Below, one piece after another: positions 4,638-36,201 of a DNA stretch of 64,000 nucleotides; within the stretch, counting starts at the first letter, position 1, and each line of letters starts with the position of its first letter. A program made the translations under genes and the position numbers. The stretch covers positions 62,001-126,000 of the IMG/VR virus record IMGVR_UViG_3300044846_005229; one strand, written 5' to 3'. The notes beneath the pieces were generated by a model. It did not search any database. It was not told the origin of the DNA and saw only the letters and a program-made list of their open reading frames with translations.

Positions 4638-4638
4638 T

Positions 4639-5934
4639 TTATTCTACAATGATTAGATCATCAGATAGTGCTAAGTATTCTTGATTCATGCAAGTATCGG
4701 GGGTCATCCAAAGGGCCGAATAATTATCCACTTGCTCGTATAGGTTAATCAAGTTGTCATCCCATGGCCTTGTAAGCCATTCTGCAATGGGTTGGTAATC
4801 TGCATTTACAGACTCTCTGATGTCAAAAATTTTCTTTACCTCATAACTCGGGGAAATATCAACTTGAGCAAGTTTACAATAGGTGACTGGAACTTCTTCC
4901 CCCGCACTATTAATTACTATAGATGGCAGACTACCCAGTGGGTGAGCAACAAGAGATACTTCTGATTTACCCGTTGATGGTCCCCTCAGAAGGGAGATAG
5001 TCCCTGAAACAGAAACAGATTGTATGGAAATTTTGGGGTCTGACCACTCGATCTTCCAACCAGTATTAAAAGTGGGTATTGCAATTTTAAATGTAAAGAA
5101 TTGACCCGTACTATCCCTACTAACTTCCACTGTTTCCACAAAAATCCAATCCGGATCAGGGCAGTATGGGTTATCAGGGTACGGTTGCCCAGGGTTATCA
5201 GGATCTTCGTTAAAACAGTTGGTTATAGATAGGGTGGCGCTACCCGTAATTACAGTGTTAGGTGGGCAACGGAATGTTATCTCAGAAAAAGAAGCCGCCC
5301 TGGGGAATTGCCAGTATAAGTACGGCGCTCCAGAATAATATGGAAATACCCCATCGTAATTTCTCCATTCTAGGGTCGCATCATTGCAAAAAGCATATTT
5401 AGGTACGAACCTCCACCCTACCTCAGAATCTGTGCCACTGACGACATTCATTTCGTGACCAGATAAGGAATAATTCTCTACAGAATACAAAGCATAGAAG
5501 GGGGAATCGTCATAGGTCAATTTATAAGCTATCAAATATTGGGAATCAGCCATCCCAACCAATTCTAAATTTATAATGACTGGGCCTATGTAAAGATTAC
5601 CGTGCTCCCAAACTACGGTTCCAGGCTTGATGACTAAAAATTTATCGCCCCCTGATGCAACAACTTCTAGGGAATTAGGGCCAAACGGACTTTCCCCAGG
5701 CGGTAGATACACATAGGCAGACTTCCTATCTAGTCCAAAGTCAACATAGTATCGTTCCGATGCGGCAGGTAACCTACCATAAATAGGTCTACCACCTGGT
5801 ACCCATTCAGTGGGTGTCTCAAACAGGTTATTAGCCTCTTGAAACTGGACGGATAATATAGTACCAAATGTAGGATTAGAAGATGTCTGAATTTCCCCCC
5901 TACCCCCATTTAAAGGCGTGATAATCTGGCTCAT
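4639..5934 (-). CDS. Putative baseplate/tail protein
   Basis: 431-aa ORF overlapping the baseplate J stop by 4 nt. Confidence 0.5.
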   Translation of the reverse strand: MSQIITPLNGGRGEIQTSSNPTFGTILSVQFQEANNLFETPTEWVPGGRPIYGRLPAASERYYVDFGLDRKSAYVYLPPGESPFGPNSLEVVASGGDKFLVIKPGTVVWEHGNLYIGPVIINLELVGMADSQYLIAYKLTYDDSPFYALYSVENYSLSGHEMNVVSGTDSEVGWRFVPKYAFCNDATLEWRNYDGVFPYYSGAPYLYWQFPRAASFSEITFRCPPNTVITGSATLSITNCFNEDPDNPGQPYPDNPYCPDPDWIFVETVEVSRDSTGQFFTFKIAIPTFNTGWKIEWSDPKISIQSVSVSGTISLLRGPSTGKSEVSLVAHPLGSLPSIVINSAGEEVPVTYCKLAQVDISPSYEVKKIFDIRESVNADYQPIAEWLTRPWDDNLINLYEQVDNYSALWMTPDTCMNQEYLALSDDLIIVE

Positions 5935-8900
5935 AGACTTAAGGTCCCTTCTTTATAGTCAGGCGGTTGGTAGGGGAAAGTAGTCCCAGTATACCAAGAG
6001 AGTTGGGGAACATCTGTATTGGAACTAGGGTTCTCCCACACATAGGTTATTTTCTGATTAGAGTTAGAAAATCTCCCTGTATTGCGAGGTACTAGTGTTA
6101 TTTGGGCTACTCCCAATTTAATCGAGGAGGTCTCCAATCCAAATTGAGAGATAATTTCCTCTTCACACCTGTAAAAAGAGACGTACCTCAGTAGGTTATC
6201 GGCAAATTCTTCAAATCTGGCCGTATTGGTGACTGTCATGTTTGTCCAGTTGGTCACCGTTGTTTGAGGTGTGAATGCTCTCATTACTCTATAGATATTC
6301 CTGCCATCCTCTGCTACAAGGGTGTCCTCTGCGTATTTGATATACTCCGGATTAAAATATGGGATGTATGTCCGGGAGTCAAATTCGTTTGTTCCAGCTT
6401 CTGAGGAGTCTATGAAAATACCGTTTTTGTAGTAAATTGAAAAGTCAAATAAGGGGCTTACGCTAGATGTGGCTGTATAGGATCTTACCGAATTACCATT
6501 TCTAAAGTAGGTTCTGTCCCCTCTGTAGAAAGTAAACATCCTGACAAATGTATTTATTTCCGTCAGCCGGGGGTAAAGAGAGGTTATTTGGATTTGGAAG
6601 CCACTGCCGGTGCCGCCCAAGTAACTATTATCTATAGTCAGGACATCACCAATCGAGAACCCTCTTCCAAAATCAGATAACTCGTAGGAAATAATTGTAT
6701 TCCCTGAGACTACCAAGTTAATGGATCCGTTGACCCCAACCCCATTGATCGGGTTGCCATATATTAAAGGTAGGTTAGTATAGGCACCGTTTCGGTAACC
6801 TGACCCCCCGTTGACCAAGTTGGTCGTCTTTATTCTGCCAGATACGCTATTATCTACTAGGTCGTCTAATTGCGACCTTAGCTCGAATGAAGGTGCAAGG
6901 TTGATCACTGAGCCATCATTGATTAAGTCCTGAATAGATGTGCTGCTTGGTGTGAAGTACTTGGCGGCAATACAATAGGTAGGGGTCCCCCCTGAAACTT
7001 CCCTGTATTCTAAATACTGCCCACATTTGAATCTAGGTTTGTATTTGTAAATGGGTAGCCCACCATTGCCATCTAGTACGGACACTTCTTTTATAATGCC
7101 TTGCTTTATTAATTCGCTAAAGTAATCTACGGTTAGTGCCCCATTGGGTTCGTAAGTAAAAGGCGCAATTACATAGGCGTACTTATTGACAGCCCCTTTC
7201 GTTACGTCAACATAGTTATAATGGGGGTCAGAAACAGCATCCGGACCGCTCCCAACCTGTGGTGTGTAAACCCAAGTTCCTGCTAAGTAGGACTGACCTT
7301 CAACTAGTTGATTGTAATTATTTGGCAAGCTAGAATTTAAAGCTGGTCCTATTTTATTTTCAGTCTGGGACCCGGTAATGTCATTCGTAGAAGGGAATAA
7401 GATAAAATTCTGAGCTACCAGCCAAGCTAATCTTCCGACAGTAGTGGTAGGTAGGAACTCACCGTCTGAGTAGTCATACTCAACGATTTCTGGGTCTATT
7501 GTTGTCCCCAGTGAATATTGGTAAGTATTATTTACGACCCATGCAGAATAAGTCTTTGCCGAAGAAATTTTTCCAGCTACAAAGGCACTGGGGATATCTG
7601 CTGAAGATCCAATTACTATGTTTTCAAGGACTACGAATAATTGATTATTGAAGAACACAATGTCCCCCAAACTGTATCTACCGGCAGTAAGTAACTTTAT
7701 TTGCTTTAAAGCAAGATTACCGTACACAGTTTGGTCGAATTTGTTTGTTGAATAGGGGCTATACGCTTCTTCTACTGGGTAGTATAAGGGGTTAGGGTTA
7801 TTAACTACAATGAGGTCATCGCCATTTAAAATAGTATTTACGGGTTCAAAATCATATACATTAGTATAAATAGCAGCGTCTTTACTCAGAAGAACAGGAG
7901 TATTGTAAGCTGCGGAGTAGTTAATTTGAGGGTCTTTGAACCTACTGATAGAATCAAAAGTATTATAAAAAGCTGCATCAACATCACTTACGGTTGGGTT
8001 CGTGTCAGTTGGGAAAACATTTCCAGGGGTCAGTACTGTGGATAACCTATCCCTAAAATTCAAAGTTACAGGCTGATAATTAGAGCCATAGATACCATTG
8101 GCATCAACTTCAAGAGTTATGTTATATTGAGTTTGGCTTAGAGTAATAGGGTACAGGTGGGCTTGATTTTCAATGGGGATCGAGAAATTAATTACATTTT
8201 GACCCCTTCTTATTTGGTCATCTGTTAATTCTATACCATTGGGTCCAAGCACAAAGAAAGAAACTTGTCCATTGGGCTTCGTAAAGTCAGACAAATAATT
8301 ATAACCAAATCTGCTACTTCTATTGGGTTGAACAGAAGTCAGAGTCCCTAAACCAAACATATCTATGAAGAAATTCTCCCAGTCTGCCTGGCTAACGGGA
8401 TTCCTGCGTCGGATTAGGGAGAAAAATCTTTCTTGAACTTGAGCATATGTTTCTACATCACTGCCCCCTACCGCAGGTTCAGGATTGGTTACTACGGTGC
8501 TAGCTTCCCCGAGGTCTGGGGGACCAGTAATTGAATTAGCCGGGACATTATAGATGTTACCTACAAATTTAGAATAAACAGGGATTTCAACTTCGGTCTT
8601 ACCGGCAGGTATTGTGACACTATATGAGCTTACATATTCAAATCCTTGGCCGCCTGATAATTGGGGGTTGGATGTAAATACAGACCCGGATGGTACCGAT
8701 AAGTCTGAATTTCTTGGTGCTATTGACAACCTAACCAAAGCTGTAGCAGGGGTACCTAGTCTCCTTAGGGCGCCTAAAAATGGGCCTATCCATTCGATAA
8801 GGATCTTATTTGGTAGTTGATTCGCCCAAAATAAAAATTCACCTTGAGAAAAAGCCTGCCCCTCTAAAAGAACCGCAAGGGGATTCCCTGCACTGAAGTC

Positions 8901-9011
8901 ATTGAGGGTTTTGTTAGACGCCTCGTATACTTTTTGCGCTGCATCTTGAACTAATTGTGCCTCGTTCCTTGGGTCTATTGAAACCGAGGGGAGGGGAGCA
9001 TATCTTGGCAT
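5931..9011 (-). CDS. Baseplate J-like wedge protein with long C-terminal extension
   Basis: LNDFSAGNPLAVLLE, G..YNVPANSI and VTNPEPAVGGSDVET motifs typical of baseplate J/gp6 proteins. Confidence 0.8.
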   Translation of the reverse strand: MPRYAPLPSVSIDPRNEAQLVQDAAQKVYEASNKTLNDFSAGNPLAVLLEGQAFSQGEFLFWANQLPNKILIEWIGPFLGALRRLGTPATALVRLSIAPRNSDLSVPSGSVFTSNPQLSGGQGFEYVSSYSVTIPAGKTEVEIPVYSKFVGNIYNVPANSITGPPDLGEASTVVTNPEPAVGGSDVETYAQVQERFFSLIRRRNPVSQADWENFFIDMFGLGTLTSVQPNRSSRFGYNYLSDFTKPNGQVSFFVLGPNGIELTDDQIRRGQNVINFSIPIENQAHLYPITLSQTQYNITLEVDANGIYGSNYQPVTLNFRDRLSTVLTPGNVFPTDTNPTVSDVDAAFYNTFDSISRFKDPQINYSAAYNTPVLLSKDAAIYTNVYDFEPVNTILNGDDLIVVNNPNPLYYPVEEAYSPYSTNKFDQTVYGNLALKQIKLLTAGRYSLGDIVFFNNQLFVVLENIVIGSSADIPSAFVAGKISSAKTYSAWVVNNTYQYSLGTTIDPEIVEYDYSDGEFLPTTTVGRLAWLVAQNFILFPSTNDITGSQTENKIGPALNSSLPNNYNQLVEGQSYLAGTWVYTPQVGSGPDAVSDPHYNYVDVTKGAVNKYAYVIAPFTYEPNGALTVDYFSELIKQGIIKEVSVLDGNGGLPIYKYKPRFKCGQYLEYREVSGGTPTYCIAAKYFTPSSTSIQDLINDGSVINLAPSFELRSQLDDLVDNSVSGRIKTTNLVNGGSGYRNGAYTNLPLIYGNPINGVGVNGSINLVVSGNTIISYELSDFGRGFSIGDVLTIDNSYLGGTGSGFQIQITSLYPRLTEINTFVRMFTFYRGDRTYFRNGNSVRSYTATSSVSPLFDFSIYYKNGIFIDSSEAGTNEFDSRTYIPYFNPEYIKYAEDTLVAEDGRNIYRVMRAFTPQTTVTNWTNMTVTNTARFEEFADNLLRYVSFYRCEEEIISQFGLETSSIKLGVAQITLVPRNTGRFSNSNQKITYVWENPSSNTDVPQLSWYTGTTFPYQPPDYKEGTLSL

Positions 9012-22940: not shown

Positions 22941-25900
22941 TTAACCTAAGCCCCTTGATTGAAGTTCATTGCTCATTTGACCAATGGAAACTCTAATCAA
23001 TCCAACATCGATTCTTTCCATTGTTGGGACAGGGACATCATAGACTTGGACATTGACGATTCCGTTTTCCAGATCTTCGACCCTGTTGATCCTTTCGTCG
23101 CAGATGACTTGGAAAGCATCCGAAGGCTTAGCGCCATAAAGAGCACCTTCGTTGTAAAGTTGACCCATGACGCTGTTGCCAATGGTGACAATCTGGTTGA
23201 AGATAACTCCAAAGCCATCAATTACTGAGAAGATTTGATTATCAAATACCCTGCGGAGCGAACCATAAACAACGTTTTGAATGACGCGGGTGTTGACAAA
23301 TTGGTACTTACGTTGTTCAGGGATAGCAGGGTTAATCCTAGTTCTTCCACCCCAGATGAAAATCGCAGAAGAAGCATAACCAGGAAGAGTCCTAGCAACG
23401 TTGCAACCCCTGGGGTTTAACAGGTTCTGTTGAGCAGAGTTGACAGAAAGTTGGGCGCTAATAGCATCGACAAGTTGATACTTAGTGCCAGCTGGAGGGA
23501 ATTGGAACCCCTCTGAACGATAACGCCTTAGTGCAACTCCGGCCACATACGGGGAGAGAGGAATGTACTGACCCGCTGAATTAAGGATGTGTGGGCCATA
23601 GTAGGCAATAAATCCAAAAGCGTTAAAGTAGCGTTGGCTATCCTCTAGCAAGCGTGCTACATTATCGACACCGGCCTCTATGAATACCGCCTCTGGTTCA
23701 CCTGAATTTCCCACCCCACGTAAAGCATCATCGATAATCTCAGTGGATGTAATGGCATCAAAGTTCCACAAATTGGTTAATGGTGTTTGCTCTTCGGTTA
23801 ATACAAGTTCGACTTGTGAGCCATGGCACACATGGCCAACCGAAGTAAGATCACCACCAAGGCTATTAGCAGGGACCACAACCCAGTCGTAACTGCCCCC
23901 GTTAAGCACTACAGCAATCCGGTCACCCACTTTAACTGCAGTCATACCGTCTGGTGCCACAGAGTTTGTTGGTGCCGAGGTCACTTGGAAGTAGACACCA
24001 CCCAAATGGCTGATAGAAGACTGAATGTTAATGCCTGTGCTGGAAACGGCTAGTCCGCAAGCTACCGCATAAGGAGAAGCTACATCAAGAAGTCCTGTGC
24101 CAGCGGTGGTATTAGCCCCGTAGTCGCCACCGTAGATGGCGTCAATGGCTGGAACTATGAAGGCCTGGGAGGTAAAGTTTTGGTCTGTAGTCGGGGTGCA
24201 AATATAGTTTTGAGTTGAACTCTGCGTTGCACCCGGATTAACTAAAGCCAGGGTAGGCAGCCATCCAGCAGATGTGGTTTCACCATAGGGGAAAATCAAC
24301 TCCTCACCAAGGATCTTGGAACTCCTATTAAGATACATGGACACAGTTGGGTTGCCAGCTCCGGGGGCTGGTGCCACCGATGCGTCAGCAGCCTGGCTTG
24401 CGATAATACCGCTGTTTAAACCATATTTCCGAGCCCTAATTAGGGGGATAGTGGTTAGTTCGGCCAAATTAACAGAAGTCAAGTTACCACCCAGTACCCC
24501 GGAGTACAAAATGGTGGGCTTTGTGGAAATAGAGCCAGATGGGAAAGTAATGTATGAGCCAGACAAATACCCCGTATAGCTAGATGCTAGCAGGATGGTA
24601 TCATTATCAATGACCTTGGCAAAGTAAGGATTAATGGAGTTAGCAGTAGTTGCCTTTAGCAAAGTCGTGGTGCCAGCCAAAACAGCTTGCGTGAAGAAGA
24701 CTTTTTGACCATTGACTAGACCATGCTTATTGATGTCTAGTGACGCATGAGCAGTAGTACTACCGGTCATGGTATAAGAATTGATACCCTCAGAAGGGTC
24801 AAACAAAGTCCTTGAGATGAAATTCAGCCTATAATCTCTGGTTGAATCCTGAAGGGTTGCAGGAAGGTGCAATGTATTAACTCCCTTTGTTTCCCCTGTG
24901 ATATTTTGAACCAGGTTAGAGGTTTGCCCCTGAATTTCAACAGGCCAATTCCAGTCAGGTGTGCCGTAAGTGACGACCGCTGTAGATCCGGTTGGGGTGT
25001 TAACTACATAAGCTCCATTTGCTGCAGCTACACCGTTAGCTACAAGGTCAGTGCCCCCAGCAGCCATAACCGCTGTCAACACTGCAGTAGCTTCAGATGC
25101 TGTTTCTGTGATGTAGACATATTGAGTGCTGCTATTAGAAGGATAAGCACAGAACAGATTCTCATCATATGGGGGTGCTACGATATAGACAGTAGCTGAA
25201 GTCTCACCCATGCCAAACAATCCACCGAAGTCCGCACCAGCGTTGCTGATGGTTACCTCTTGAATCTCTTTCCCAACTGGCCAAACAGCACCATCAACAA
25301 CGAAAATGCCATTCTGGGCCAAACCAGAAACAGACTCCAATGCAAAGACAGCTGGGTCTAAAATGCCAACCTTCTCACCAGCAGCTACAGTTGCTGTAGA
25401 TTGCAGTACTGCGACCTTTGGGCTATGGCCAGGGATCATAGATTGGTATGGCAAACGTCTGTAAGTAACGTCATTGCCGATCCATTCGTAAATGGTATTA
25501 TCAACCAAATACTTCAAGCCCATTACCAAATCTTCGGCGGGCTGATGTGGGATGTAGTTTTTATATTTATTGATATCTGTGACTAAGAACGAGCCTCCGT
25601 CTGCCAAAGCCAGCCACTTAAAGTTACCATCTTCGCAATGGGCAGCAGCAGCAGCTCCCACGGCAGTTCTACCTGCAGCATCAAACTGTGCATATGCAGT
25701 GGGCGATAGCAGATATCCCTGGTCTTGTTGTCCGTCAAATGCAGTTCTGATGCACTGAACATAGTCTTGAGGGACCCTTTCCAGGCTAGTCTGGGCACAA
25801 TCAATAGTTCCGACCACATAGCAATCGGTCATTAAGATTTTAGCAGCGCCTACAATGAATTGTTCAGGTACTACTTGGATAGTCCCGTCAAAAGTTGTAG

Positions 25901-26591
25901 CTGCCAGGACTGCAAATCCGCTTTCTGAATTTGTCTCAGGGCAAAGGGTATTTACTAGGCCCGACTCCCTGACATAGGCGGAACTGCTAATGCTAGGATT
26001 AGACTCAATTGCAGCAGCAAATGCGTTGACGATTGCAGATGAAATCTTACGGTTATTTACTTCGTCTCCAACGATATAACTAACGGGGATAGTAACGGGG
26101 ACACCAAGCCACTCGCCATTGGCAGTATAACCAGTGGAACCGTCTCCAGCCACTAGCTTTTGGCCATTAAGGGTCATTTGGATATACACCTGGTCACCAG
26201 CTTCAAGCTGGGAAGGTAGTCCAGTGGAATTGATTTTGGTGCCAGAAGGTAGAAACTCGATTTCAGCAATCTGAGTTGGTGTTCCTACTCTGACGACACG
26301 AACGTCCCCAACTTGTTGGGCATTTAGGAAAAGTTCATTTACACAATTATAGCTAAGAAGGGGGATTTTCTCGGTGGGGACCCCTCCTACTAAGGCCCTA
26401 TAGTCATTCAGAGAAGTGATGACGACAGGGGCATTAAACGGAAAGCGACTTACTGGGACAGTATCCTCAGTTTCTACCAACATGTAAGCGGTGTTAAATG
26501 TTGCGATTGGCGCGGCTGTAATATTGCCAGCGACTTCGTTTATGAATGTACCAGGGGCCCCAGGAGTGGTGCCAAAAGAGAAAGTTGCCAT
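22941..26591 (-). CDS. Contractile tail sheath protein (1216 aa, large insertion)
   Basis: N-terminal PGTFINE; C-terminal AYYGP, FPPAG, LNPRGCN, IWGGRT, FVNTR, AFQVICDERIN and PTMERI. Confidence 0.9.
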   Translation of the reverse strand: MATFSFGTTPGAPGTFINEVAGNITAAPIATFNTAYMLVETEDTVPVSRFPFNAPVVITSLNDYRALVGGVPTEKIPLLSYNCVNELFLNAQQVGDVRVVRVGTPTQIAEIEFLPSGTKINSTGLPSQLEAGDQVYIQMTLNGQKLVAGDGSTGYTANGEWLGVPVTIPVSYIVGDEVNNRKISSAIVNAFAAAIESNPSISSSAYVRESGLVNTLCPETNSESGFAVLAATTFDGTIQVVPEQFIVGAAKILMTDCYVVGTIDCAQTSLERVPQDYVQCIRTAFDGQQDQGYLLSPTAYAQFDAAGRTAVGAAAAAHCEDGNFKWLALADGGSFLVTDINKYKNYIPHQPAEDLVMGLKYLVDNTIYEWIGNDVTYRRLPYQSMIPGHSPKVAVLQSTATVAAGEKVGILDPAVFALESVSGLAQNGIFVVDGAVWPVGKEIQEVTISNAGADFGGLFGMGETSATVYIVAPPYDENLFCAYPSNSSTQYVYITETASEATAVLTAVMAAGGTDLVANGVAAANGAYVVNTPTGSTAVVTYGTPDWNWPVEIQGQTSNLVQNITGETKGVNTLHLPATLQDSTRDYRLNFISRTLFDPSEGINSYTMTGSTTAHASLDINKHGLVNGQKVFFTQAVLAGTTTLLKATTANSINPYFAKVIDNDTILLASSYTGYLSGSYITFPSGSISTKPTILYSGVLGGNLTSVNLAELTTIPLIRARKYGLNSGIIASQAADASVAPAPGAGNPTVSMYLNRSSKILGEELIFPYGETTSAGWLPTLALVNPGATQSSTQNYICTPTTDQNFTSQAFIVPAIDAIYGGDYGANTTAGTGLLDVASPYAVACGLAVSSTGINIQSSISHLGGVYFQVTSAPTNSVAPDGMTAVKVGDRIAVVLNGGSYDWVVVPANSLGGDLTSVGHVCHGSQVELVLTEEQTPLTNLWNFDAITSTEIIDDALRGVGNSGEPEAVFIEAGVDNVARLLEDSQRYFNAFGFIAYYGPHILNSAGQYIPLSPYVAGVALRRYRSEGFQFPPAGTKYQLVDAISAQLSVNSAQQNLLNPRGCNVARTLPGYASSAIFIWGGRTRINPAIPEQRKYQFVNTRVIQNVVYGSLRRVFDNQIFSVIDGFGVIFNQIVTIGNSVMGQLYNEGALYGAKPSDAFQVICDERINRVEDLENGIVNVQVYDVPVPTMERIDVGLIRVSIGQMSNELQSRGLG

Positions 26592-29238: not shown

Positions 29239-32184
29239 TTAAATGAGACCCTTCCGGATTGAATCATACCGGAAAGTCAACTTATTGACAGCACCCAATT
29301 CAAATAGTTGGGTCATTGAGTATTCAACCCCGGGTGGTTCATCACCCCCGGACTGATTGGATGGAGTTACCGTATTCTCTTTTGGGGACTTCCGGAGCCT
29401 GTCATCAATAGCAACCGAGGAGAAGAACGCTCGGCTCAATGGTAATTCGGGTATTTCCATCGCATAGTGGAATAAACACCAAGTGAAAAGGTGGGCAATC
29501 TGGAATAACACGGCAAACTGCTCTGCGTATTTTTCCGGTGTCATGAAATGCAGTTCATCATGGATGCTAATTATGAATCGGTAGGGGATCTTAAACTCTT
29601 CAGCCAGCCATGCCACGGCAGTTAGGGTGATAGACAAGATTTCAGACCCAGACGCTTGAATTGCCCAATTTGTCCTACCTGTTTTAAAATCATTGCCGAC
29701 TGCAGAGGGCATCATGGCCGTTGATATTTTTGTACCCAGACAAGGTAACCGGGGTGTACCCGGCCCCATGGAAATTCTTTCCATCATATTGAATGCGCCT
29801 GAGTCTGACCCACCTTCGTATTTACCGAACCTTAAGACCCCCTTCTTAGACGCAATAGCTTTAAGAGCAAAAGTCTTGACTGCATCCTCATCTTTATTGG
29901 GGAAGGTCATCCTGATGGGGTTACTAAGGGCTCTGACGCTCCCGCCGTACAAAGTAGCAAATCCTACAATCTTGGCCAGGTCCCTCGTTATTTTGAGCAT
30001 AGTGTCCTTTTCCTTATCAATTGGGGACACCCAGTAGCCATCACGGGGATGGCAATCATCGCTGTCTTCAGGTTTTTGCTCATATTTATAGCAGATCCCC
30101 AGGGTCTTATCCCAAATTAGACCTTCATACAGCTCGGGAAAGATGGCTCGGGCCAATGCAGTGTGAGGATCAGTGCCATTCTCTTTAGAACCCGAAAGCA
30201 CATTGTATCCCATGGGCGAACACCCAATGAAACCACCCTCCCATTTATCACTATAGATAGACGCAATCTGCATCTCTTGGCCGTCATAGTCCGCACTAAT
30301 GATTTTCCACCCCTCAGGGGCCTGAACACGGGTCTTAAGCTCGGTTCCGATGCGCCAGCTCTTGGTAGAGCACATGGTGGCCATAAGGCTCTCTACGACC
30401 CTCCGGGTGACGGTTCCGTGGCAGATGATCTCTGGAAGGGTAACGAGGTTAGGTTTCCCTAAGGGGTTGGTGGCCCCCATGACAATACGGCTTTTAACCC
30501 GGCTGCGAACTGATGTCCAAAAACTAATGGCATTGGCGATTTCTAGCGCCCTTTTTGCCTCCGGTAAGTCACTACTTAGTCTTCCAACTTCCATGTGAGT
30601 AACGAACTCTTTTGAGAATAGTCCGCCTACGTTTTCCCCAGGTTTCTTAGGGTGTGGGATTCTATCCAGGGTGCCTTCCCCCGTAGTAAAACACCAACCT
30701 TGTCCATCTTCCCAAACGATAGGGGTGCCTTCCCATTTTAGTTTCAGTAGGAAATGCGATAGTTTGCTTTTAACGCCAATCTCCTTATCAGGGTCCTTCT
30801 TATAGGGCCTCATCCAAGTGGGGATCCATGCGTAGACACCCTTAATAGACTTCACTTCCCAATCTAATTGGCGAATCCATGGGTCTTTTGATACCCATTT
30901 GCTTGCCTCTTTGACCCCGATTTCCTTTGTTTCGTGGCTGTCTACTATTTCCTTCCATGAATTGAAAGTATCCCATAGCAAAGTCTTACAAAGACCGGTC
31001 ATTTCCTGGTTATGGCTGTTATAGACTTCCTCAGCCCCTTGCACCCATTCAAACCAGTTGTCCACTAACGGCACCACAGACCCATTCAGATGGTAATGCC
31101 CGCAAAGCCCCACCATTGATGGTGTGCTATCAAGGTATTTTGGCCATAGAGCCTGGAATAATTCCGAAGTATAATAAGCGTCCTTAATGGCATAATCGAC
31201 TGTTTCAGCTAGTACCTTATTGATTTCGGAAAGCGTATCAGCGGTAACAAAAATGTTCCTAATTTCCTTGTCGGAATCTGATAATGGCTTTACATCGCCA
31301 TCGTCAAAGAAAAATTCCTTTGCCCGTTGAACATGAAAGTTGTATGTTTTAACTAGGGAGTTTGTGCTCCCCCTGTCAAGCCATTCTGGGGAGTACTTGA
31401 GTTTCCGCTTCTCCTCATCATCAAGCAGATCAAAGTCCTTTTCAGCCAGGGCATAAAGCCACCTTTGGCCTGATGCTAATCCTGATACGCCAACGTGGGC
31501 TGATAGGGTGTCAAAGTAGAAATTTTCCGGTTTGGTAAAATCTAGTGAATAACCCTCTTGGGCCCTCACACGGTCATAGGATATATTATGGCCAATAACA
31601 AGCCTATCAGTTCCAATTGGAATAAGTTTAAATTGATCCCAATCATTTTGGGGAATATCAAGGTTAACAAGCTCGGCGGCTAACCAAATATAGGCGGCCC
31701 TATCACTTAGAGCAGTTCCAATAATAGGAAAGGCCCCACCTTTAACGAAAGTTTCCGTGTCAAATGTAAATACTTTTTCTTCGGGGTAGGGTACTTCCCT
31801 AGTTTGCCACTGTTTGTCAGGGCCATCGCCGATAAGCTCATACCGCGTCCACCCCGATTGGAATACTAAATCGGTGATTGACGGAATCTTTGGTAGGGTG
31901 CATTTGGCAAATTTATTGCCTAGTTCCTTGTAGCGTCCAACTTGATTTTCTGCAATCTTTTCAAAGTGGTCGCGGATATTGTTGGCCTTTAGGCTAGGCA
32001 GGGGGACTGGCCCATCATAGATGCTTTCGGGATAATCAACTGGGGTCTCAATCCCAAATTTCCTCAAAAGGGAAACGGCCTGATCCTTTTGCTTGCTATT
32101 CATTTCGGGCCTGTAATCAGATCCAAAAATCTTTAGGTGCAAGTCATCGGACAAGACCGGGTAGCCAAGGGCAGTAGTTTTCAT
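29239..32184 (-). CDS. Family A DNA polymerase, mitochondrial Pol-gamma-like
   Basis: Exonuclease motifs FDTET, GHNISYDRVR and FDTLSAHVGVSGL; polymerase motifs HGTVTRR, RIGTELKTRVQAPEGWKIISADYDGQE, RDLAKIVGFATLYG, NWAIQASG and ISIHDE. Confidence 0.92.
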   Translation of the reverse strand: MKTTALGYPVLSDDLHLKIFGSDYRPEMNSKQKDQAVSLLRKFGIETPVDYPESIYDGPVPLPSLKANNIRDHFEKIAENQVGRYKELGNKFAKCTLPKIPSITDLVFQSGWTRYELIGDGPDKQWQTREVPYPEEKVFTFDTETFVKGGAFPIIGTALSDRAAYIWLAAELVNLDIPQNDWDQFKLIPIGTDRLVIGHNISYDRVRAQEGYSLDFTKPENFYFDTLSAHVGVSGLASGQRWLYALAEKDFDLLDDEEKRKLKYSPEWLDRGSTNSLVKTYNFHVQRAKEFFFDDGDVKPLSDSDKEIRNIFVTADTLSEINKVLAETVDYAIKDAYYTSELFQALWPKYLDSTPSMVGLCGHYHLNGSVVPLVDNWFEWVQGAEEVYNSHNQEMTGLCKTLLWDTFNSWKEIVDSHETKEIGVKEASKWVSKDPWIRQLDWEVKSIKGVYAWIPTWMRPYKKDPDKEIGVKSKLSHFLLKLKWEGTPIVWEDGQGWCFTTGEGTLDRIPHPKKPGENVGGLFSKEFVTHMEVGRLSSDLPEAKRALEIANAISFWTSVRSRVKSRIVMGATNPLGKPNLVTLPEIICHGTVTRRVVESLMATMCSTKSWRIGTELKTRVQAPEGWKIISADYDGQEMQIASIYSDKWEGGFIGCSPMGYNVLSGSKENGTDPHTALARAIFPELYEGLIWDKTLGICYKYEQKPEDSDDCHPRDGYWVSPIDKEKDTMLKITRDLAKIVGFATLYGGSVRALSNPIRMTFPNKDEDAVKTFALKAIASKKGVLRFGKYEGGSDSGAFNMMERISMGPGTPRLPCLGTKISTAMMPSAVGNDFKTGRTNWAIQASGSEILSITLTAVAWLAEEFKIPYRFIISIHDELHFMTPEKYAEQFAVLFQIAHLFTWCLFHYAMEIPELPLSRAFFSSVAIDDRLRKSPKENTVTPSNQSGGDEPPGVEYSMTQLFELGAVNKLTFRYDSIRKGLI

Positions 32185-32252: not shown

Positions 32253-32576
32253 TTAGGACACTGAGTCCAAAGGTGGTGGCACTAGGCTGTCGGCAACTGG
32301 GGAAAGGATTGCGCTGAAACCATCGCCAAATATACGTTTTGAAGGCTGCGCCCATCGTGGTTGGTTTTCTGACCAGCTATGGACATAGTAGCTGAATGTG
32401 ACGGGTCTACCGAGAGTGTCGCTCGGGGCATTGCCTGATGTGCCCAAGAAGTAACCGGAGTAAAGGTTGCTCCACCCCATGTAAGGCTTGGCTATGATGT
32501 TGCCGTATTCACTTACTGACTCCTCCCCAATAATGTCAGCTACGGCTTTCGCCATTACTACTGTAAGTGGTACCAT
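32253..32576 (-). CDS. Hypothetical protein
   Basis: 107-aa ORF with GGGTAAAA 26 nt upstream. Confidence 0.45.
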   Translation of the reverse strand: MVPLTVVMAKAVADIIGEESVSEYGNIIAKPYMGWSNLYSGYFLGTSGNAPSDTLGRPVTFSYYVHSWSENQPRWAQPSKRIFGDGFSAILSPVADSLVPPPLDSVS

Positions 32577-33484
32577 TCTTCCTCTCTTTCAATTTCTTCA
32601 ATTTTACCCCTTACCCAAGTTGATTCCGTATCATCATCTAGGTCACCATCTAGTTGGAAATTAATTGATTGATTTAGTTTTTGAAAACTTACTTCAAAAT
32701 CCTGAAGACCTGAACTTATGTAAACATCTTTTCTATTTCTCTTGTAGATGTCAAATACGTCATCAATTTTTGAAAATTCATGGGGGCGGCATTCCGGGTG
32801 CTGCTGCCACTTTCTCATTTCGAAGAATGAAAATGGCTCATCGATTTCCCATGATTTATCTTTACCTTCGAAAAGTCTAATAAGGGCGTCCCTCTTCCAC
32901 CAATTGCTTACTCTGTCAATATAATACTCCCATGCAGTTTCGTCAGTCAAGTAAGTATCACAATCTTTACGGATTGACTCAAGTTCTTTTTTACCGTCGT
33001 TTATGACATCCATGGTAGCTTCAGGGAGCACACCAAATAGGTACTCAGGGCGGCACTCATTGATGCGTTCATACACACTGGGAAACAAAACCGAGTAGCA
33101 CATTAGCTTATAGTCGTCAGAATCTCCACAAATTAAATCTAAGATAGTTTCAAAGATTGATATTGACGTTGCGATTTGCTTTTCCAGGTCTGGCTCGTGC
33201 TCTTCTTCCCGGTCTGGCAGTCCTCTTTCACTTCTAAGATCACGAATTTCACTCATCAACCCCTCAATATCAAGCTTTAGCTTCTTGTTTTCCCTACCCA
33301 TTTCTCTTTCTAGCCGTGCCTTGTAAGCCTCCACTTCGTAGAATAGGTTTGTAACTTTTTCTTTTAGATAATCAAGAGATAATGCCGTCTTATTATCTAG
33401 TTGGGTGCGAGCATTAAAGTCTTTTTCAACACTGCGGATACTGGAGAGAACGCTGGTTTTTAATTTGAGAATCGAATCGTTCAC
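32558..33484 (-). CDS. Hypothetical coiled-coil protein
   Basis: 308-aa ORF, co-oriented and abutting its neighbours. Confidence 0.6.
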   Translation of the reverse strand: MNDSILKLKTSVLSSIRSVEKDFNARTQLDNKTALSLDYLKEKVTNLFYEVEAYKARLEREMGRENKKLKLDIEGLMSEIRDLRSERGLPDREEEHEPDLEKQIATSISIFETILDLICGDSDDYKLMCYSVLFPSVYERINECRPEYLFGVLPEATMDVINDGKKELESIRKDCDTYLTDETAWEYYIDRVSNWWKRDALIRLFEGKDKSWEIDEPFSFFEMRKWQQHPECRPHEFSKIDDVFDIYKRNRKDVYISSGLQDFEVSFQKLNQSINFQLDGDLDDDTESTWVRGKIEEIEREEEWYHLQ

Positions 33485-33485
33485 G

Positions 33486-34055
33486 TTAAATTGGTTTGAT
33501 GGTTGCTTTTAGTTTGTTTTCTGGTTCTCCGGGTTCAGTTGTATCTGATGGCCGGATTATGAAGCTGAATTTCTTTTCAGGGTCTGATAGCAGATGAAAA
33601 TCACCCATAAAATGTTTGCCTTCAGAAGATAACAAAAATGAATTACCCGGTGTCGGCGGAGAACACAAGGCAATGTCACCTTCTAAATCGGGGTCAGCCT
33701 CTTCGATGGCTATTACTAATTCCCTGTAAATGGCGGAGGTCTTGGCTAGATCCTCATCAGTGGTTATTTCAGCCCTGACTTCATCCTGTACGGCCTCTAA
33801 GCGAGATTCTAGGCCAGTGTCAAGCTGGATGGTGAAGATAGCTCCGTCATTTTCCGACTCAAACATGACTTCTTCAGGTTCAAATTCACAGTCTTCGGGC
33901 TCTTGATCTGTGAAATCAAACTCCAGAAGCGAGTAGAAAGCTTCTTTAAGTGTGTCACCGTCTGGGCCACCTAGGTAGTTGGCTATGGCATAGAAGATTT
34001 TGGGGTTTGCTAACAATCTGGAGACAGGGTATACAATTGACATAGTTCGGTCCAT
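33486..34055 (-). CDS. Hypothetical acidic protein
   Basis: 189-aa ORF with TGCTATACT upstream. Confidence 0.6.
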   Translation of the reverse strand: MDRTMSIVYPVSRLLANPKIFYAIANYLGGPDGDTLKEAFYSLLEFDFTDQEPEDCEFEPEEVMFESENDGAIFTIQLDTGLESRLEAVQDEVRAEITTDEDLAKTSAIYRELVIAIEEADPDLEGDIALCSPPTPGNSFLLSSEGKHFMGDFHLLSDPEKKFSFIIRPSDTTEPGEPENKLKATIKPI

Positions 34056-34146: not shown

Positions 34147-36201
34147 TCAAGAGATTGAAGGGAGTTTAATTTCAGTTAAGTTCGCAATTTTAGCCCCTTT
34201 CGCACCAGGTTTCCCTAGCTTTATGGAAAGGTCAATTTTTGCTGGTTTTTTCTTTGTCGATACCCACTCGATGGTAAATGGTTTCTCCCCAAAATACATA
34301 AAGACGGCCCCTTCCGGCAACCATTGTTTGCCTGTACTTGTGGTTCTACACAGGGTTTCACCATCCATGGCCATAGCCCTTAGTTGACCATCAACCATGA
34401 ATACAGCCAGGTATTTGCGTCCCGAGACGTATGCTTCCGGTTTTGCAAGCACCACAGGTGAATACCCTGTGGAAATTACACCCTTATAGGAAGCAGGCAC
34501 CTTCTTTAGCATTCCGTCCTCGCACACTAGGATTAGCTTGTCGGTAGACCCCATGGCCAGGCAACCCTTGGGACCCTTAGATTGCTCGACGGTACCTTTC
34601 TTCATGTCGATTTTCAGGAAGCGCGGTTTTGCTATCAGGGTAGTGGCTGAGGTGGCAGATTCCCCATTGTCTACTCTAGGGCGAGTTACCGTAGAAACCG
34701 GAACATCAATTAAAGGGCTCCTGCGGGGAACCCCATATTGCTTGTTAATCCTAGCGAGTTCCTCCAACATGTATGTCTTTCGAGCACTGACATTATCGGC
34801 TTCGTCCCCCACCAAAGACCCGAGCCTTTCAATGTCAGCCAGTAGTTCATTCTTTTCGCATACCATCGAATCAAAGTCTAGGCCTGTTAATTGCCGCAAC
34901 CTCATTTCTAAAATGGCATCAGCTTGTTGTTCGGTGAATTTAAGCGGCGGTGACATTAGGGATTGCTTGGCTTCAGATTTGTCATTTGCGGCACGAATGC
35001 GTTTAATGACTAGGTCCATCCGGTCAATCGCCTTTAGGAGGCCATCAACGATGTGTAATCTTTTGTTTTTTGCCTCCAGTTCATGTTCAAATTTAACATC
35101 AAGCCGACCCAACCTCCATTGGACCCATCGTTGGATAATTTGGACCGGTGATAACTCAACGGGCTTAAACCCATCGATAACCAAGGTTTTAGCCGAGTAT
35201 TTGCAATCAAGGTCCGTATATGTGTATAGCAACTGCTTTACCAAATTAATATCAGCACCAGGTTTGAGGACCACCACCAGCCTATCCCCACTAATATCAC
35301 TTTCATCTGTGATCTCGGCTATCCCCTCAATACGTCCTTTTTCTAACTCACTCTTGATCTGCTCACCAAGTTTCTCTGGATTGGTGCCAGGTGGCAAACA
35401 AGTGAAAGTCAAGGTGGATCGATCCCTTGATTTTCCGCCCCTTTTCTGAATACCGGACTCAACACGGGCCATACAGCGTATGCCCCCGATTCCAGTACGG
35501 GTATAAGCATCTAGTTGCTCGTCTTGGACGATTTGGGTGCCAGTTGGGAAATCGGGAATTAGAGATAGGCTGGCTTTTTTTATATTATCAAGGTGGGCCT
35601 TTTCGGTAGGGGCATCCTTGCAAATTAACTTAATGGCTTCTACGATAGAACGTAAGCTGTGGGGAGCCAAACGGGTAGCAAAACCCACGGCAATTCCTGA
35701 GTCACCGTTTAGCAAAACGGTTGGCAAAGAAGTATTAAACCTGATGGCCTCCCGCTTACTGCCATCATAGTTTGATTTAGTTTCCCACACTTCCCGGTCT
35801 TGTAAAAGAAGTTCCACTGCGGAAATTCGTAGTCTATTTTCTAGGTACCTTTCTGCTGAGGGGGAGTCAACTGTGCTTCCAATATTTCCATGACAATCAA
35901 TCCAAGGGACATTATTGTTCCAGGGGGTAGCCATGTTAATCAGGGCCCCGTATGCAGAGCCATGGGGATGGTAATAGGCACTAGTTAGGCCCGTAGTTCG
36001 GGCACACTTTACATACGGTTTATTCGGAAGCAATCCCTCTTCAATCATCGTCTGAAGGATGCGTCTTTGAACTGCCTTTAACCCATCGTAAATGTCCGGT
36101 ATCGATCTCCCGATAAGCACGGCCATACTGTAGCTCAAATAGTCTTCCTTGAGCTGATCGACGAGATTGACTTCTGTGATTTTTGGCCTAGTTTTAGTCA
36201 T
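34147..36201 (-). CDS. Type IIA topoisomerase subunit A (GyrA/ParC-like)
   Basis: YLSYSMAVLIGRSIPDIYDGLKAVQRRIL, YHPHG, SAERY (catalytic Tyr), GIAVGFAT, PDFPTG and QADAILEMRLRQLTGL. Confidence 0.92.
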   Translation of the reverse strand: MTKTRPKITEVNLVDQLKEDYLSYSMAVLIGRSIPDIYDGLKAVQRRILQTMIEEGLLPNKPYVKCARTTGLTSAYYHPHGSAYGALINMATPWNNNVPWIDCHGNIGSTVDSPSAERYLENRLRISAVELLLQDREVWETKSNYDGSKREAIRFNTSLPTVLLNGDSGIAVGFATRLAPHSLRSIVEAIKLICKDAPTEKAHLDNIKKASLSLIPDFPTGTQIVQDEQLDAYTRTGIGGIRCMARVESGIQKRGGKSRDRSTLTFTCLPPGTNPEKLGEQIKSELEKGRIEGIAEITDESDISGDRLVVVLKPGADINLVKQLLYTYTDLDCKYSAKTLVIDGFKPVELSPVQIIQRWVQWRLGRLDVKFEHELEAKNKRLHIVDGLLKAIDRMDLVIKRIRAANDKSEAKQSLMSPPLKFTEQQADAILEMRLRQLTGLDFDSMVCEKNELLADIERLGSLVGDEADNVSARKTYMLEELARINKQYGVPRRSPLIDVPVSTVTRPRVDNGESATSATTLIAKPRFLKIDMKKGTVEQSKGPKGCLAMGSTDKLILVCEDGMLKKVPASYKGVISTGYSPVVLAKPEAYVSGRKYLAVFMVDGQLRAMAMDGETLCRTTSTGKQWLPEGAVFMYFGEKPFTIEWVSTKKKPAKIDLSIKLGKPGAKGAKIANLTEIKLPSIS

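What the first reader, a model, noticed from the sequence alone, without database searches (positions are those of the whole stretch)
29239..32184. Mitochondrial Pol-gamma-like DNA polymerase in a myovirus-type phage
Seen: HGTVTRRVVE...RIGTELKTRVQAPEGWKIISADYDGQEMQIA, GHNISYDRVR, DTLSAHVGVSGL, IPHPKKPGENVG, ISFWTSVRSR and AFFSSVAIDDRLRK. These track POLG-specific blocks (GTITRRAVE..., RVGSELKAMVQAPPGY..VGADVDSQELWIA, AFFSAVDID..LRK) much more closely than PolI or T7. Known: POLG-like enzymes have been reported in Acaryochloris siphoviruses. Inference: this is an additional phage lineage informative about the origin of the opisthokont mitochondrial replicase.
Basis: partly seen in the sequence, partly recalled or inferred. 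Interest (0 to 1): 0.62.

Follow-up and report, generated by a model that had tools for sequence, protein, structure and literature searches.

The report
Pol-gamma-type replicase in freshwater jumbo cyanophage
The gene is a genuine, intact relative of the mitochondrial DNA polymerase gamma and is probably the replicase of a 279-kb freshwater myovirus-type cyanophage, but such enzymes are already published for cyanophages, including its closest relative S-CBWM1, and this lineage is not the one closest to the mitochondrial enzyme.

Summary
Observation confirmed. Window 29239-32184 (-) is one 981-aa ORF holding all seven quoted peptides. It matches yeast Mip1 and animal POLG at E about 1e-97 (Pol I E 0.85), carries Pfam PF18136, and its AlphaFold model (pLDDT 92.5) superposes on human POLG at TM 0.8 (Klenow 0.34). 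All exonuclease and polymerase catalytic residues are intact. It is the only family-A polymerase in a 279,339-bp terminally repeated phage genome; no family-B was detected. The genome encodes a tail sheath and baseplate J, an HLIP and a cyanobacterial-type tmRNA, and is held by about 20 lake-metagenome studies.

Interpretation partly supported. POLG-like polymerases are already published for the myoviruses S-TIM5 and S-CBWM1 and the siphoviruses A-HIS1/2 and Mic1. The query is sister to S-CBWM1 gp77 (55 % identity, support 100/99) in a collinear core of about 70 genes. In my trees Mic1-like proteins, not this clade, sit next to eukaryotic POLG; making this clade the eukaryotes' sister is rejected (AU p 7e-6). 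The root is unresolved (phage monophyly p 0.35).

So: new member of a known kind; first seen here in a jumbo freshwater genome. The enzyme is a "minimal" POLG with Phe at the human Tyr951 position.

Side find: the capsid gene holds 12 group I introns, removed in metatranscriptome contigs.

The parts
29239..32184 (-). POLG-family DNA polymerase gene, 981 aa, uninterrupted (P0001)
   Evidence: ORF. Pfam PF18136 2.3e-61 plus PF00476. phrog_22619 7.6e-223. PDB Mip1/POLG about 1e-97. AF2 pLDDT 92.5 and TM 0.8 to human POLG. Only family-A polymerase in the genome; no family-B detected.
31135..32004 (-). 3'-5' proofreading exonuclease domain (aa 61-350), with ExoI D142/E144, ExoII D204 and ExoIII Y331/D335
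   Evidence: PF18136 covers aa 61-350. These residues are invariant in the 43-sequence alignment A1. Motif blocks are printed.
30505..31134 (-). Compact spacer (linker) region (about aa 351-560) between the exonuclease and polymerase domains. It lacks the long vertebrate insertions.
   Evidence: Fish POLG has extra segments of 59, 13, 87 and 21 aa after query residues 452, 462, 503 and 504. Yeast has only 35 extra aa after residue 503. The HMMER alignment to mouse POLG skips 460-557 and 597-711.
29305..30504 (-). Polymerase domain (about aa 561-960): motif A D632/E637, motif B R734/K738/F742/Y746, motif C H875-D876-E877
   Evidence: Invariant columns in A1. Motif alignment. The human register follows from the HMMER offset, query 782-954 = human 1042-1213.
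29992..30138 (-). Lineage-specific 49-aa insertion (aa 683-731) between motifs A and B, modelled as beta hairpins
   Evidence: Absent from eukaryotic, S-TIM5 and Mic1-like sequences; 13 aa shorter in S-CBWM1. Present only in the 958-994-aa relatives and absent in the 915-931-aa ones. Strands 689-721 have pLDDT about 88-92.
34147..36201 (-). Type II topoisomerase / gyrase-A-like subunit, upstream in the same gene string
   Evidence: PF00521 1.2e-94. phrog_551 8.7e-95. 51 % identity to S-CBWM1 gp73, in the same relative position.
32253..34055 (-). Three small ORFs of unknown function between the topoisomerase and the polymerase. Two are conserved with S-CBWM1 gp75 and gp76.
   Evidence: tblastn 28 % and 22 % identity to the gp75 and gp76 positions. 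No Pfam or PHROG family.
22941..26591 (-). Tail sheath protein (1216 aa): the basis for 'myovirus-type'
   Evidence: phrog_17610 1.6e-40 and phrog_23 1.6e-21. 43 % identity over 802 aa to S-CBWM1 gp167 tail sheath.
5931..9011 (-). Baseplate J-like protein
   Evidence: PF04865 1.1e-11. 52 % identity to S-CBWM1 gp178.

Best explanation
The ORF encodes the replicative DNA polymerase of a 279-kb freshwater myovirus-type phage whose host is probably a cyanobacterium. It is a single-chain family-A enzyme of the Pol gamma subfamily, built of three parts: a POLG-type N-terminal 3'-5' proofreading exonuclease, a compact spacer, and a C-terminal polymerase domain. All catalytic carboxylates are in place.

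It is a 'minimal' Pol gamma:
- It has no N-terminal targeting extension.
- It lacks the long vertebrate spacer insertions, which (from published POLG structures) include the accessory-subunit-interacting determinant.
- It lacks the yeast C-terminal extension.
So it most likely works without a POLG2-like partner, as yeast Mip1 does (inferred).

Motif B carries Phe742 where eukaryotic POLG, T7 gp5 and Mic1-like enzymes have Tyr (human Tyr951). By analogy with Pol I Phe762 this predicts discrimination against dideoxynucleotides (inferred).

It is expected to act with the phage's own type II topoisomerase subunit, a D5-related primase, a FEN-type 5'-3' exonuclease and a DnaQ-like exonuclease. I detected no homologue of the other mitochondrial or T7-type replisome parts (Twinkle/gp4, single-subunit RNA polymerase, gp2.5 or SSB).

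In evolutionary terms it is the sister of S-CBWM1 gp77, within a large, mostly uncultured phage radiation of POLG-like enzymes.
For: Identity and fold.

Catalytic residues: D142, E144, D204, Y331, D335, D632, E637, R734, K738 and D876 are invariant, and Y746, H875 and E877 are at least 90 % conserved, across 43 phage and eukaryotic sequences, and all are present in the query.

Polymerase complement: one PF18136 hit, one PF00476 hit and no PF00136 hit in the complete terminally repeated genome (DTR).

Minimal architecture: indel map against fish, yeast and Fonticula POLG.

Phe at the Tyr951 position: query, S-CBWM1 and A-HIS have F; all 22 eukaryotic and 7 Mic1-like rows have Y. PMC7156551 says the same for S-CBWM1 and A-HIS.

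Replisome neighbours:
- Topoisomerase.
- Primase, phrog_25243. Its C-terminal half is homologous (E 2e-17) to a DUF5906 protein encoded beside a Mic1-like polymerase.
- FEN and DnaQ-like exonucleases.
- No DnaB_C or SSB Pfam hits, and no T7 gp1, gp4 or gp2.5 hit by tblastn or phmmer.
- Phage sigma-factor homologues point to use of the host RNA polymerase (against the annotation).

Phylogeny: query + S-CBWM1 100/99; POLG family against Pol I/T7 91/96.

Host and habitat: HLIP motif, cyano_tmRNA at 72.8 bits, DUF1517, about 20 lake or freshwater metagenome studies apart from the three possible source samples.

The gene is real and conserved: 13 IMG/VR contigs at 94-100 % identity and more than 300 relatives at 59 % identity or above.
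Against: [quoted passage not shown]
- Absence of an accessory subunit, a clamp or a helicase is argued from negative sequence searches of limited sensitivity. With the same tools T7 gp5 does not even find the POLG-like gene, and the Pfam RNA_pol control rang in no genome.
- About 180 kb of the genome is unannotated small ORFs that could hide partners.
- The host is inferred, not shown.
- The assignment of the missing spacer segments to the accessory-interacting determinant rests on my knowledge of human POLG numbering, not on a residue-level structural comparison done here.
Confidence: 0.88

Rival explanations
1. The phage POLG-like genes, this one included, descend from an ancient capture of a eukaryotic mitochondrial polymerase gene by a phage. 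On this view they say nothing about where the mitochondrial enzyme came from.
For: A tree with all phage-length proteins held as one clade, apart from eukaryotes plus outgroup, is only 2 log-likelihood units worse and is not rejected (p-AU 0.35). The outgroup branches are very long (Klenow 4.3, T7 1.9), so the root is weak. Czernecki et al. note the highest similarity to fungal Pol gamma.
Against: Phage-type diversity is large and deep: 1,315 clusters at 50 % identity, 443 of them at E <= 1e-30. The eukaryotes form one well-supported clade (95/100) that sits beside one phage subgroup in the best trees. The phage enzymes lack every eukaryote-specific extension. A recent capture is excluded for the query, which is 30-35 % identical to eukaryotic POLG and lies in a syntenic phage core.
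Confidence: 0.2
2. The enzyme is a repair or accessory polymerase, and the genome is replicated by the host replisome or by an unrecognised phage polymerase.
For: Family-A polymerases are often repair enzymes. A separate DnaQ-like (Pol III epsilon-type) exonuclease gene is present. About 180 kb of the genome is unannotated.
Against: It is the only polymerase detected: no family-B hit and no second family-A hit. It lies in a conserved replication gene string with the topoisomerase. It is retained in every related phage, from 55 kb siphoviruses to this 279-kb genome. It has full proofreading and polymerase motifs, like the replicative POLG and T7 enzymes.
Confidence: 0.07
3. The gene is a eukaryotic contaminant or an assembly chimera inside a viral contig.
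For: None found. It was considered only because POLG is otherwise a eukaryotic nuclear gene.
Against: The gene occupies the same position between the same neighbours as in the cultured phage S-CBWM1. It recurs at 94-100 % identity on 13 independent IMG/VR contigs of up to 127 kb and in lake metagenomes from about 20 further studies. GC content is unremarkable across the region. It has no introns and no targeting extension.
Confidence: 0.01

Closest known systems
Synechococcus phage S-CBWM1 gp77 'DNA polymerase gamma' (ATW62761.1; Aokuangvirus, estuarine cyanomyovirus, 139 kb)
   Same: Sister in all trees (100/99). 54.6 % identity over the full length. Same neighbours: gyrase-A-like gene, two small ORFs, polymerase, tail-completion genes. 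Same Phe in motif B and the same fingers insertion.
   Different: No nucleotide-level match (megablast). The host genome here is twice as large (279 kb against 139 kb) and from freshwater. The insertion is 13 aa longer. Only about 73 of about 508 ORFs are shared.
Cyanophage S-TIM5 DNA polymerase (YP_007006067.1; Aurunvirus, marine cyanomyovirus)
   Same: Same phage-only clade A. POLG-type exonuclease, spacer and polymerase layout. 36 % identity.
   Different: Tyr rather than Phe at the human Tyr951 position. Motif C reads HDS rather than HDE in the alignment. It lacks the 49-aa insertion.
Acaryochloris siphoviruses A-HIS1/A-HIS2 polg (Chan et al. 2011)
   Same: POLG-like, clade A, Phe in motif B.
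   Different: 31 % identity. Siphovirus genomes of about 55 kb. They form a separate subclade.
Microcystis siphovirus Mic1 ORF86/85 DNA polymerase gamma (PMC7156551) and unnamed Mic1-like metagenomic proteins
   Same: POLG-like phage enzyme of freshwater origin. The gene family is prone to group I introns.
   Different: 30 % identity. Mic1's gene is split by an intron. It belongs to the group that branches next to eukaryotic POLG (91/96) and has Tyr in motif B, like the eukaryotes.
Yeast Mip1 and human/mouse POLG catalytic subunit (PDB 9c51, 8d33, 9g74 and others)
   Same: Whole-chain fold (TM 0.75-0.81). Exonuclease and polymerase motifs. The GT-x-TRR and AFFS-x-V-x-ID signature blocks. E about 1e-97.
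   Different: 25-27 % structural-alignment identity. No targeting presequence. It lacks about 180 aa of vertebrate spacer insertions, a 48-aa vertebrate insertion after query residue 787, and the 274-aa yeast C-terminal extension. Phe replaces Tyr951. It has an extra 49-aa fingers insertion. It is encoded by a phage, not by a nucleus.
T7 gp5 and E. coli Pol I (Klenow)
   Same: Family-A palm, fingers and thumb with motifs A, B and C and a DnaQ-type exonuclease. Pol I shares the Phe in motif B.
   Different: Only marginal sequence similarity (E 0.85; no BLAST or phmmer hit). TM 0.34. No POLG-type spacer. Separated by a branch of 2.4 substitutions per site.

Membership tests
DNA polymerase gamma subfamily of family A (Pfam PF18136 + PF00476; CDD cd08641; cluster 2 of Czernecki et al. 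2023) | POLG-type N-terminal 3'-5' exonuclease domain | tested here: met
   PF18136 scores 2.3e-61 / 207.9 bits against a cut-off of 26.7, covering 6-282 of 282 profile positions. It rings in none of 14 control prokaryote genomes.
DNA polymerase gamma subfamily of family A | Intact Exo I, II and III and Pol A, B and C catalytic residues | tested here: met
   D142, E144, D204, Y331, D335, D632, E637, R734, K738, Y746 and H875-D876-E877 are all present and are invariant or at least 90 % conserved across the family.
DNA polymerase gamma subfamily of family A | Spacer domain between exonuclease and polymerase, and an overall POLG fold | tested here: met
   The AF2 model (pLDDT 92.5, pTM 0.91) aligns over about 1050-1130 columns to human POLG (TM 0.79-0.81) and to Mip1 (TM 0.75). 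Klenow gives 0.34. The spacer is shorter than in animals.
DNA polymerase gamma subfamily of family A | Branches with POLG/Mip1 to the exclusion of Pol I and T7-type enzymes | tested here: met
   The ingroup/outgroup branch has support 91/96 and length 2.36; 99* in the 64-row tree.
DNA polymerase gamma subfamily of family A | Tyr at the human Tyr951 position of motif B (a eukaryotic POLG hallmark) | tested here: not met
   The query has Phe742. All 22 eukaryotic rows have Tyr. Clade-A phage rows are a mix of F and Y. This residue characterises the eukaryotic enzymes rather than the subfamily as a whole.
Mitochondrial replicase in the strict sense (nuclear-encoded, organelle-targeted POLG with or without POLG2) | N-terminal targeting extension; accessory-subunit-interacting spacer insertion (animals) | tested here: not met
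   Fish, yeast and Fonticula sequences have 38, 30 and 101 extra N-terminal residues. The fish sequence has spacer insertions of +59, +13, +87 and +21 aa that are absent here. The gene lies in a phage genome.
Mitochondrial/T7-type replisome as a set (POLG + Twinkle/gp4 + single-subunit RNAP) | Co-occurrence of a gp4/Twinkle-type primase-helicase and a T7-type RNA polymerase | tested here: not met
   No DnaB_C hit. No tblastn or phmmer hit for T7 gp1, gp4 or gp2.5. The Pfam RNA_pol search was uninformative because its control was silent. The primase is phrog_25243 and is related to a DUF5906 protein.
S-CBWM1-like cyanomyoviruses (genus Aokuangvirus and kin) | Shared collinear core genome; genus-level nucleotide identity | tested here: inconclusive
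   Core: about 73 ORFs at 22-70 % amino-acid identity, collinear over genome 4.6-100 kb: met. Nucleotide identity: no megablast match for the polymerase gene, so it is not the same genus by the usual 70 % rule. The family-level relation is plausible but no formal criterion was computed.
Myovirus morphotype | Contractile tail sheath and baseplate genes | tested here: met
   Sheath: phrog_17610 and phrog_23. Baseplate J: PF04865. Homology to the structural genes of the cultured myovirus S-CBWM1 (morphotype from PMC7156551).

The most novel reading that the evidence does not exclude
Eukaryotic POLG arose from within a large, mostly uncultured radiation of phage POLG-like polymerases, with the freshwater Mic1-like lineage as its nearest surviving relative. 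The mitochondrial replicase would then be a captured cyanophage-type enzyme. The window's S-CBWM1-like clade is an outlying branch of that radiation and shows that the enzyme can serve genomes from 55 kb to 279 kb without a recognisable accessory subunit.
Probability: 0.4. Interest if true: 0.6.

Novelty: new member of a known kind. Interest (0 to 1): 0.32.

Why it matters
The phage link to the mitochondrial DNA polymerase has been discussed since 2011, so the basic observation is not new. This window adds four things.

1. The S-CBWM1-type POLG-like enzyme also serves a jumbo (279 kb) freshwater phage that is common in lakes. That widens both the genome-size range and the habitat of the family.
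2. The family is much larger than the handful of isolates suggests: 1,315 clusters at 50 % identity. A properly sampled test of the phage-origin hypothesis is therefore now possible.
3. With that sampling, the Mic1-like lineage, not the S-CBWM1, S-TIM5 or A-HIS lineages, is the candidate sister of eukaryotic POLG. The root remains unresolved.
4. The enzyme is a compact, confidently modelled 'minimal Pol gamma' with a natural Phe at the Tyr951 position. That makes it a convenient comparative system for POLG processivity and nucleotide-analogue selectivity.

Tried and rejected
- Megablast of the gene against 50,697 phage records found no match, so the phage is not a known isolate at the nucleotide level.
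With the single protein, none of 185,579 species genomes gave a hit. That scan finds close relatives only, so it says little about prophages of other clades.
- MAFFT L-INS-i timed out twice. The trees therefore rest on an FFT-NS-i alignment.
- The AU test on the 64-row set never finished. It was redone on 32 rows.
- The groups tested were named after seeing the tree, which weakens the p-values.
- Pfam and PDB sequence searches on the two primase halves gave nothing; only PHROGs named them.
- The Pfam DUF5906, SSB and DnaB_C searches of the genome were negative.
- The Pfam RNA_pol search was uninformative because its control rang nowhere. It was replaced by T7 gp1, gp4 and gp2.5 tblastn and phmmer, also negative but of low sensitivity.
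- psbA (PF00124) is absent, so the cyanobacterial host rests on the HLIP, the tmRNA, DUF1517 and kinship.
- Contamination or chimera was rejected (see rivals).
Exons were located only by tblastn of S-CBWM1 proteins, by reference.
Full report
**1. The observation**

Window 29239-32184 (minus strand) is a single ATG-initiated ORF of 981 codons.
- Pfam assigns aa 61-350 to PF18136, the exonuclease domain of mitochondrial DNA polymerase (2.3e-61), and the C-terminal part to PF00476.
- PHROGs gives phrog_22619 'DNA polymerase' at 7.6e-223.
- Against all PDB sequences the best matches are yeast Mip1 (4.6e-97) and mouse and human POLG (about 1e-95). The best Pol I chain scores E 0.85.

**2. Structure and catalytic equipment**

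With a 43-sequence alignment (A1), AlphaFold2 gives a confident model (mean pLDDT 92.5, pTM 0.91).
- Foldseek places about 35 POLG and Mip1 entries first (TM 0.74-0.81 over about 1050-1130 columns, best E 2.7e-60).
- Pol I, Pol theta and phage Pol I structures follow only at TM 0.32-0.39.

The catalytic residues are all present in the query. D142, E144, D204, Y331, D335, D632, E637, R734, K738 and D876 are invariant across the phage and eukaryotic sequences; Y746, H875 and E877 are at least 90 % conserved:
- Exonuclease: Exo I D142/E144, Exo II D204, Exo III Y331/D335.
- Polymerase: motif A D632/E637, motif B R734/K738/Y746, motif C H875-D876-E877.

The HMMER register (query 782-954 = human 1042-1213) equates H875-D876-E877 with human 1134-1136. 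The human residue numbers are my own knowledge of the literature.

One informative difference concerns the motif-B position four residues after the lysine. It is Phe742 in the query, S-CBWM1 and A-HIS1/2. It is Tyr in all 22 eukaryotic rows, all 7 Mic1-like rows, T7 gp5 and S-TIM5. The Mic1 paper notes the same pattern (PMC7156551). By analogy with Pol I Phe762 and T7 Tyr526, this predicts discrimination against dideoxynucleotides. That is inference.

**3. Architecture relative to eukaryotic POLG**

- The fish POLG representative has 38 extra N-terminal residues, spacer insertions of 59, 13, 87 and 21 aa (after query residues 452, 462, 503 and 504), and 48 aa after residue 787.
- The yeast-type sequence has only a 35-aa spacer insertion but a 274-aa C-terminal extension.
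- The phage protein lacks all of these.
- It carries its own 49-aa insertion (aa 683-731) between motifs A and B, modelled as beta hairpins.
- That insertion is variable. It is present in the 958-994-aa close relatives, absent in the more numerous 915-931-aa ones, and 13 aa shorter in S-CBWM1.

I read the protein as a 'minimal Pol gamma' that probably works without a POLG2-like subunit, as Mip1 does. The assignment of the missing vertebrate segments to the accessory-interacting determinant was not tested at residue level here.

**4. The genome it sits in**

The window is bases 62001-126000 of a 279,339-bp IMG/VR virus record with direct terminal repeats (124 bp exact). My crude ORF call gives about 508 ORFs, 431 of them on one strand, and aragorn finds 21 tRNAs.

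About 73 ORFs match the cultured estuarine cyanomyovirus S-CBWM1 at 22-70 % amino-acid identity. They are collinear over genome 4.6-100 kb. Roughly 180 kb has almost no counterpart (against the annotation).

The polymerase has the same neighbours as S-CBWM1 gp77:
- A gyrase-A-like type II topoisomerase subunit (PF00521 1.2e-94) lies upstream.
- Two conserved small ORFs sit in between.
- Tail-completion genes and the tail sheath follow downstream.

Sheath and baseplate J confirm 'myovirus-type'.

Several lines point to a cyanobacterial host:
- An HLIP gene with the canonical E-x2-NGR-x-AM-x-G motif.
- A cyanobacteria-type permuted tmRNA, RF01851 at 72.8 bits, just above its gathering score of 70.
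- A DUF1517 protein.
- The kinship with S-CBWM1.

psbA is absent. The polymerase DNA is held by lake or freshwater metagenomes from about 20 studies apart from the three possible source samples, and by 13 IMG/VR contigs at 94-100 % protein identity.

**5. Role**

The genome has one PF18136 hit, one PF00476 hit and no family-B polymerase, so this is the presumptive replicase.

Other replication genes are:
- The topoisomerase subunit.
- A primase (phrog_25243) whose C-terminal half is homologous (E 2e-17) to a DUF5906 (D5-type) protein encoded beside a Mic1-like polymerase.
- A FEN-type 5'-3' exonuclease and a DnaQ-like exonuclease.

I found no DnaB/Twinkle-type helicase and no SSB by Pfam. No homologue of T7 gp1, gp4 or gp2.5 appeared by tblastn or phmmer. 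The Pfam RNA_pol search was uninformative. Homologues of the S-CBWM1 sigma factors are present, which suggests transcription by the host RNA polymerase.

These negatives have limited sensitivity: T7 gp5 itself does not find the POLG-like gene with the same tools. As far as can be seen, only the polymerase is 'mitochondrial-type'.

**6. What is already known**

POLG-like genes were reported in the Acaryochloris siphoviruses A-HIS1/2 (2011), the cyanomyoviruses S-TIM5 (2012) and S-CBWM1 (2018), and the freshwater siphovirus Mic1 (2020). The Mic1 authors concluded that cyanophage and opisthokont enzymes share an origin (PMC7156551). Czernecki et al. place the cyanophage enzymes in the Pol gamma cluster and note that their function is unproven (PMC10201439).

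tblastn against 50,697 phage records finds exactly these phages and no others: S-CBWM1 54.6 %, S-TIM5-group 36 %, A-HIS 31 %, Mic1 30 %.

The word-index search returns 302 relatives, and the 120 best listed are all at 59 % identity or above, many named 'DNA polymerase gamma 1' by JGI and some on contigs of 110-264 kb. The exhaustive search finds 1,315 clusters at 50 % identity (443 at E <= 1e-30).

**7. Phylogeny**

Seven clusters from the long-protein clade that carry names in their sources are all eukaryotic: fish POLG, Nakaseomyces Mip1, two chytrids, Fonticula, Mitosporidium and Kwoniella. The phage-length clusters are unnamed metagenomic proteins. One of them (P0178) lies on a 55-kb contig with a phage-like gene string.

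Three trees agree: FastTree on 138 rows, IQ-TREE LG+C20 PMSF on 64 rows, and a careful search with bootstraps on 32 rows.

| Branch | Support |
|---|---|
| POLG family separate from Klenow and T7-type outgroups | 91/96 |
| Query sister of S-CBWM1 gp77 | 100/99 |
| Clade A (phage-only; also holds S-TIM5 and A-HIS) | 100* with 29 rows; 90/71 in the small set |
| Eukaryotes monophyletic | 95/100 |
| Mic1-like phage-length proteins next to the eukaryotes | 91/96 |

An AU test rejects a tree in which the query/S-CBWM1 clade is the eukaryotes' sister (delta lnL 237, p 7e-6). A tree with all phage-type proteins as one clade is not rejected (delta lnL 2.0, p 0.35). So whether the eukaryotes nest inside the phage diversity remains open.

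Caveats:
- The groups were named after seeing the tree.
- The outgroup branches are very long.
- The alignment is FFT-NS-i.
- Four unnamed 'eukaryotic' rows are labelled by clade position and length only.

**8. Verdict on the interpretation**

The family assignment and the phage context are right. The claim of a new lineage that is informative on the mitochondrial origin is not.
- The polymerase is the sister of an enzyme already annotated and published as Pol gamma-like in a myovirus.
- A different phage group (Mic1-like) is the better candidate for the eukaryotes' nearest relative.
- What is new is the setting: a jumbo, freshwater, widespread relative of S-CBWM1. The scale of the uncultured family is also new.

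Hence 'new member of a known kind', with modest interest.

**9. Noticed on the way**

The major capsid gene, about 13 kb from the polymerase gene on the same strand, is the most unusual thing in the window.
- Rfam finds 12 group I introns (57-102 bits) at window 10235-15911.
- S-CBWM1's uninterrupted capsid protein maps onto at least seven short exons between them.
- Two of the intervening stretches hold HNH-type ORFs.
- Genome-wide, the only other group I introns are 3 in the primase gene. The polymerase gene is intron-free, unlike Mic1's.
- In two lake metatranscriptomes, contigs of depth about 150 and 56 join the exons precisely at nine joints. Four of these joints enclose micro-exons of 5, 8, 9 and 30 nt. 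This matches removal of all the mapped introns.
- A contig whose polymerase is 98 % identical has at least 7 introns instead of 12 in a region about 770 nt shorter, so intron content is polymorphic.
- An intron-free allele in a co-occurring strain could in principle give the same RNA contigs. I did not build a joined exon model.
- For context, gut 'Jug' jumbo phages average 18.5 introns per genome, but their genes are split into only two or three pieces (PMC12880540).

Noticed in passing
window 10073-15911, minus strand: The major capsid protein gene is interrupted by 12 group I introns (Rfam RF00028, 57-102 bits). Exons homologous to S-CBWM1 gp175 are as short as 15-30 codons, and there are micro-exons of 5-30 nt. 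Contigs from two lake metatranscriptomes (X21, X23) join the exons at nine precise joints, as expected for a fully spliced mRNA. An intron-free allele of a strain about 98.5 % identical is not excluded. S-CBWM1's capsid gene has no intron.
   Followed up: partly
window 10552-11202 and 12932-13567, minus strand: There are two HNH-type endonuclease-like ORFs (216 and 211 aa, similar to S-CBWM1 gp28). The first lies within the 869-nt Rfam intron match 10533-11401; the second lies in the 1142-nt stretch (12579-13722) that the RNA joint skips. They are candidate homing endonucleases.
   Followed up: no
G001 (IMG/VR contig of L023), 52450-57278; loci L046, L048: A relative with a 98 % identical polymerase has only about 7-8 capsid-gene introns, in a region about 770 nt shorter. 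The stretch around one endonuclease ORF is unrelated in sequence. Intron content therefore varies between close strains.
   Followed up: partly
L006 10409-13356 (genome 19408-22355), minus strand; outside the window: The homologue of the S-CBWM1 gp136 primase is split into two ORFs (310 and 327 aa, both phrog_25243). About 1 kb between them holds 3 group I introns. These and the capsid introns are the only group I introns in the 279-kb genome.
   Followed up: partly
L041 1722-1984 (genome about 225921-226183), minus strand: The phage encodes a cyanobacteria-type permuted tmRNA: RF01851 at 72.8 bits (gathering score 70) and RF04321 at 56.1 bits. This is unusual cargo and a hint to the host.
   Followed up: no
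window 45128-46297, minus strand: A class I aminoacyl-tRNA synthetase of the Tyr/Trp type (PF00579 2.5e-64) is encoded by the phage, alongside 21 tRNA genes elsewhere in the genome.
   Followed up: no
window 38734-39804, minus strand; L031 1453-1656 (genome 14770-14973): There is a DUF1517 protein (3e-55), a family I know from cyanobacteria and plastids, and a 67-aa high-light-inducible protein with the canonical motif. psbA is absent.
   Followed up: partly
genome 55274-58478 (outside the window), minus strand: Two adjacent ORFs (472 and 576 aa) both match the S-CBWM1 large terminase, at 29 % and 54 % identity. This may be a terminase paralogue pair.
   Followed up: no
genome about 100-279 kb (window 38000-64000 and beyond): About 180 kb of mostly small, same-strand ORFs has almost no counterpart in S-CBWM1. 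This is the accessory half that makes the phage 'jumbo'. tRNA genes cluster at 254-261 kb.
   Followed up: no
L017 (Logan contig, 54.9 kb), 1574-12655: A Mic1-like POLG-type polymerase (P0178, 884 aa) lies in a phage-like gene string with a FEN-type exonuclease and a 611-aa DUF5906 (D5-type) protein. The same trio of replication functions appears in the window's phage.
   Followed up: partly
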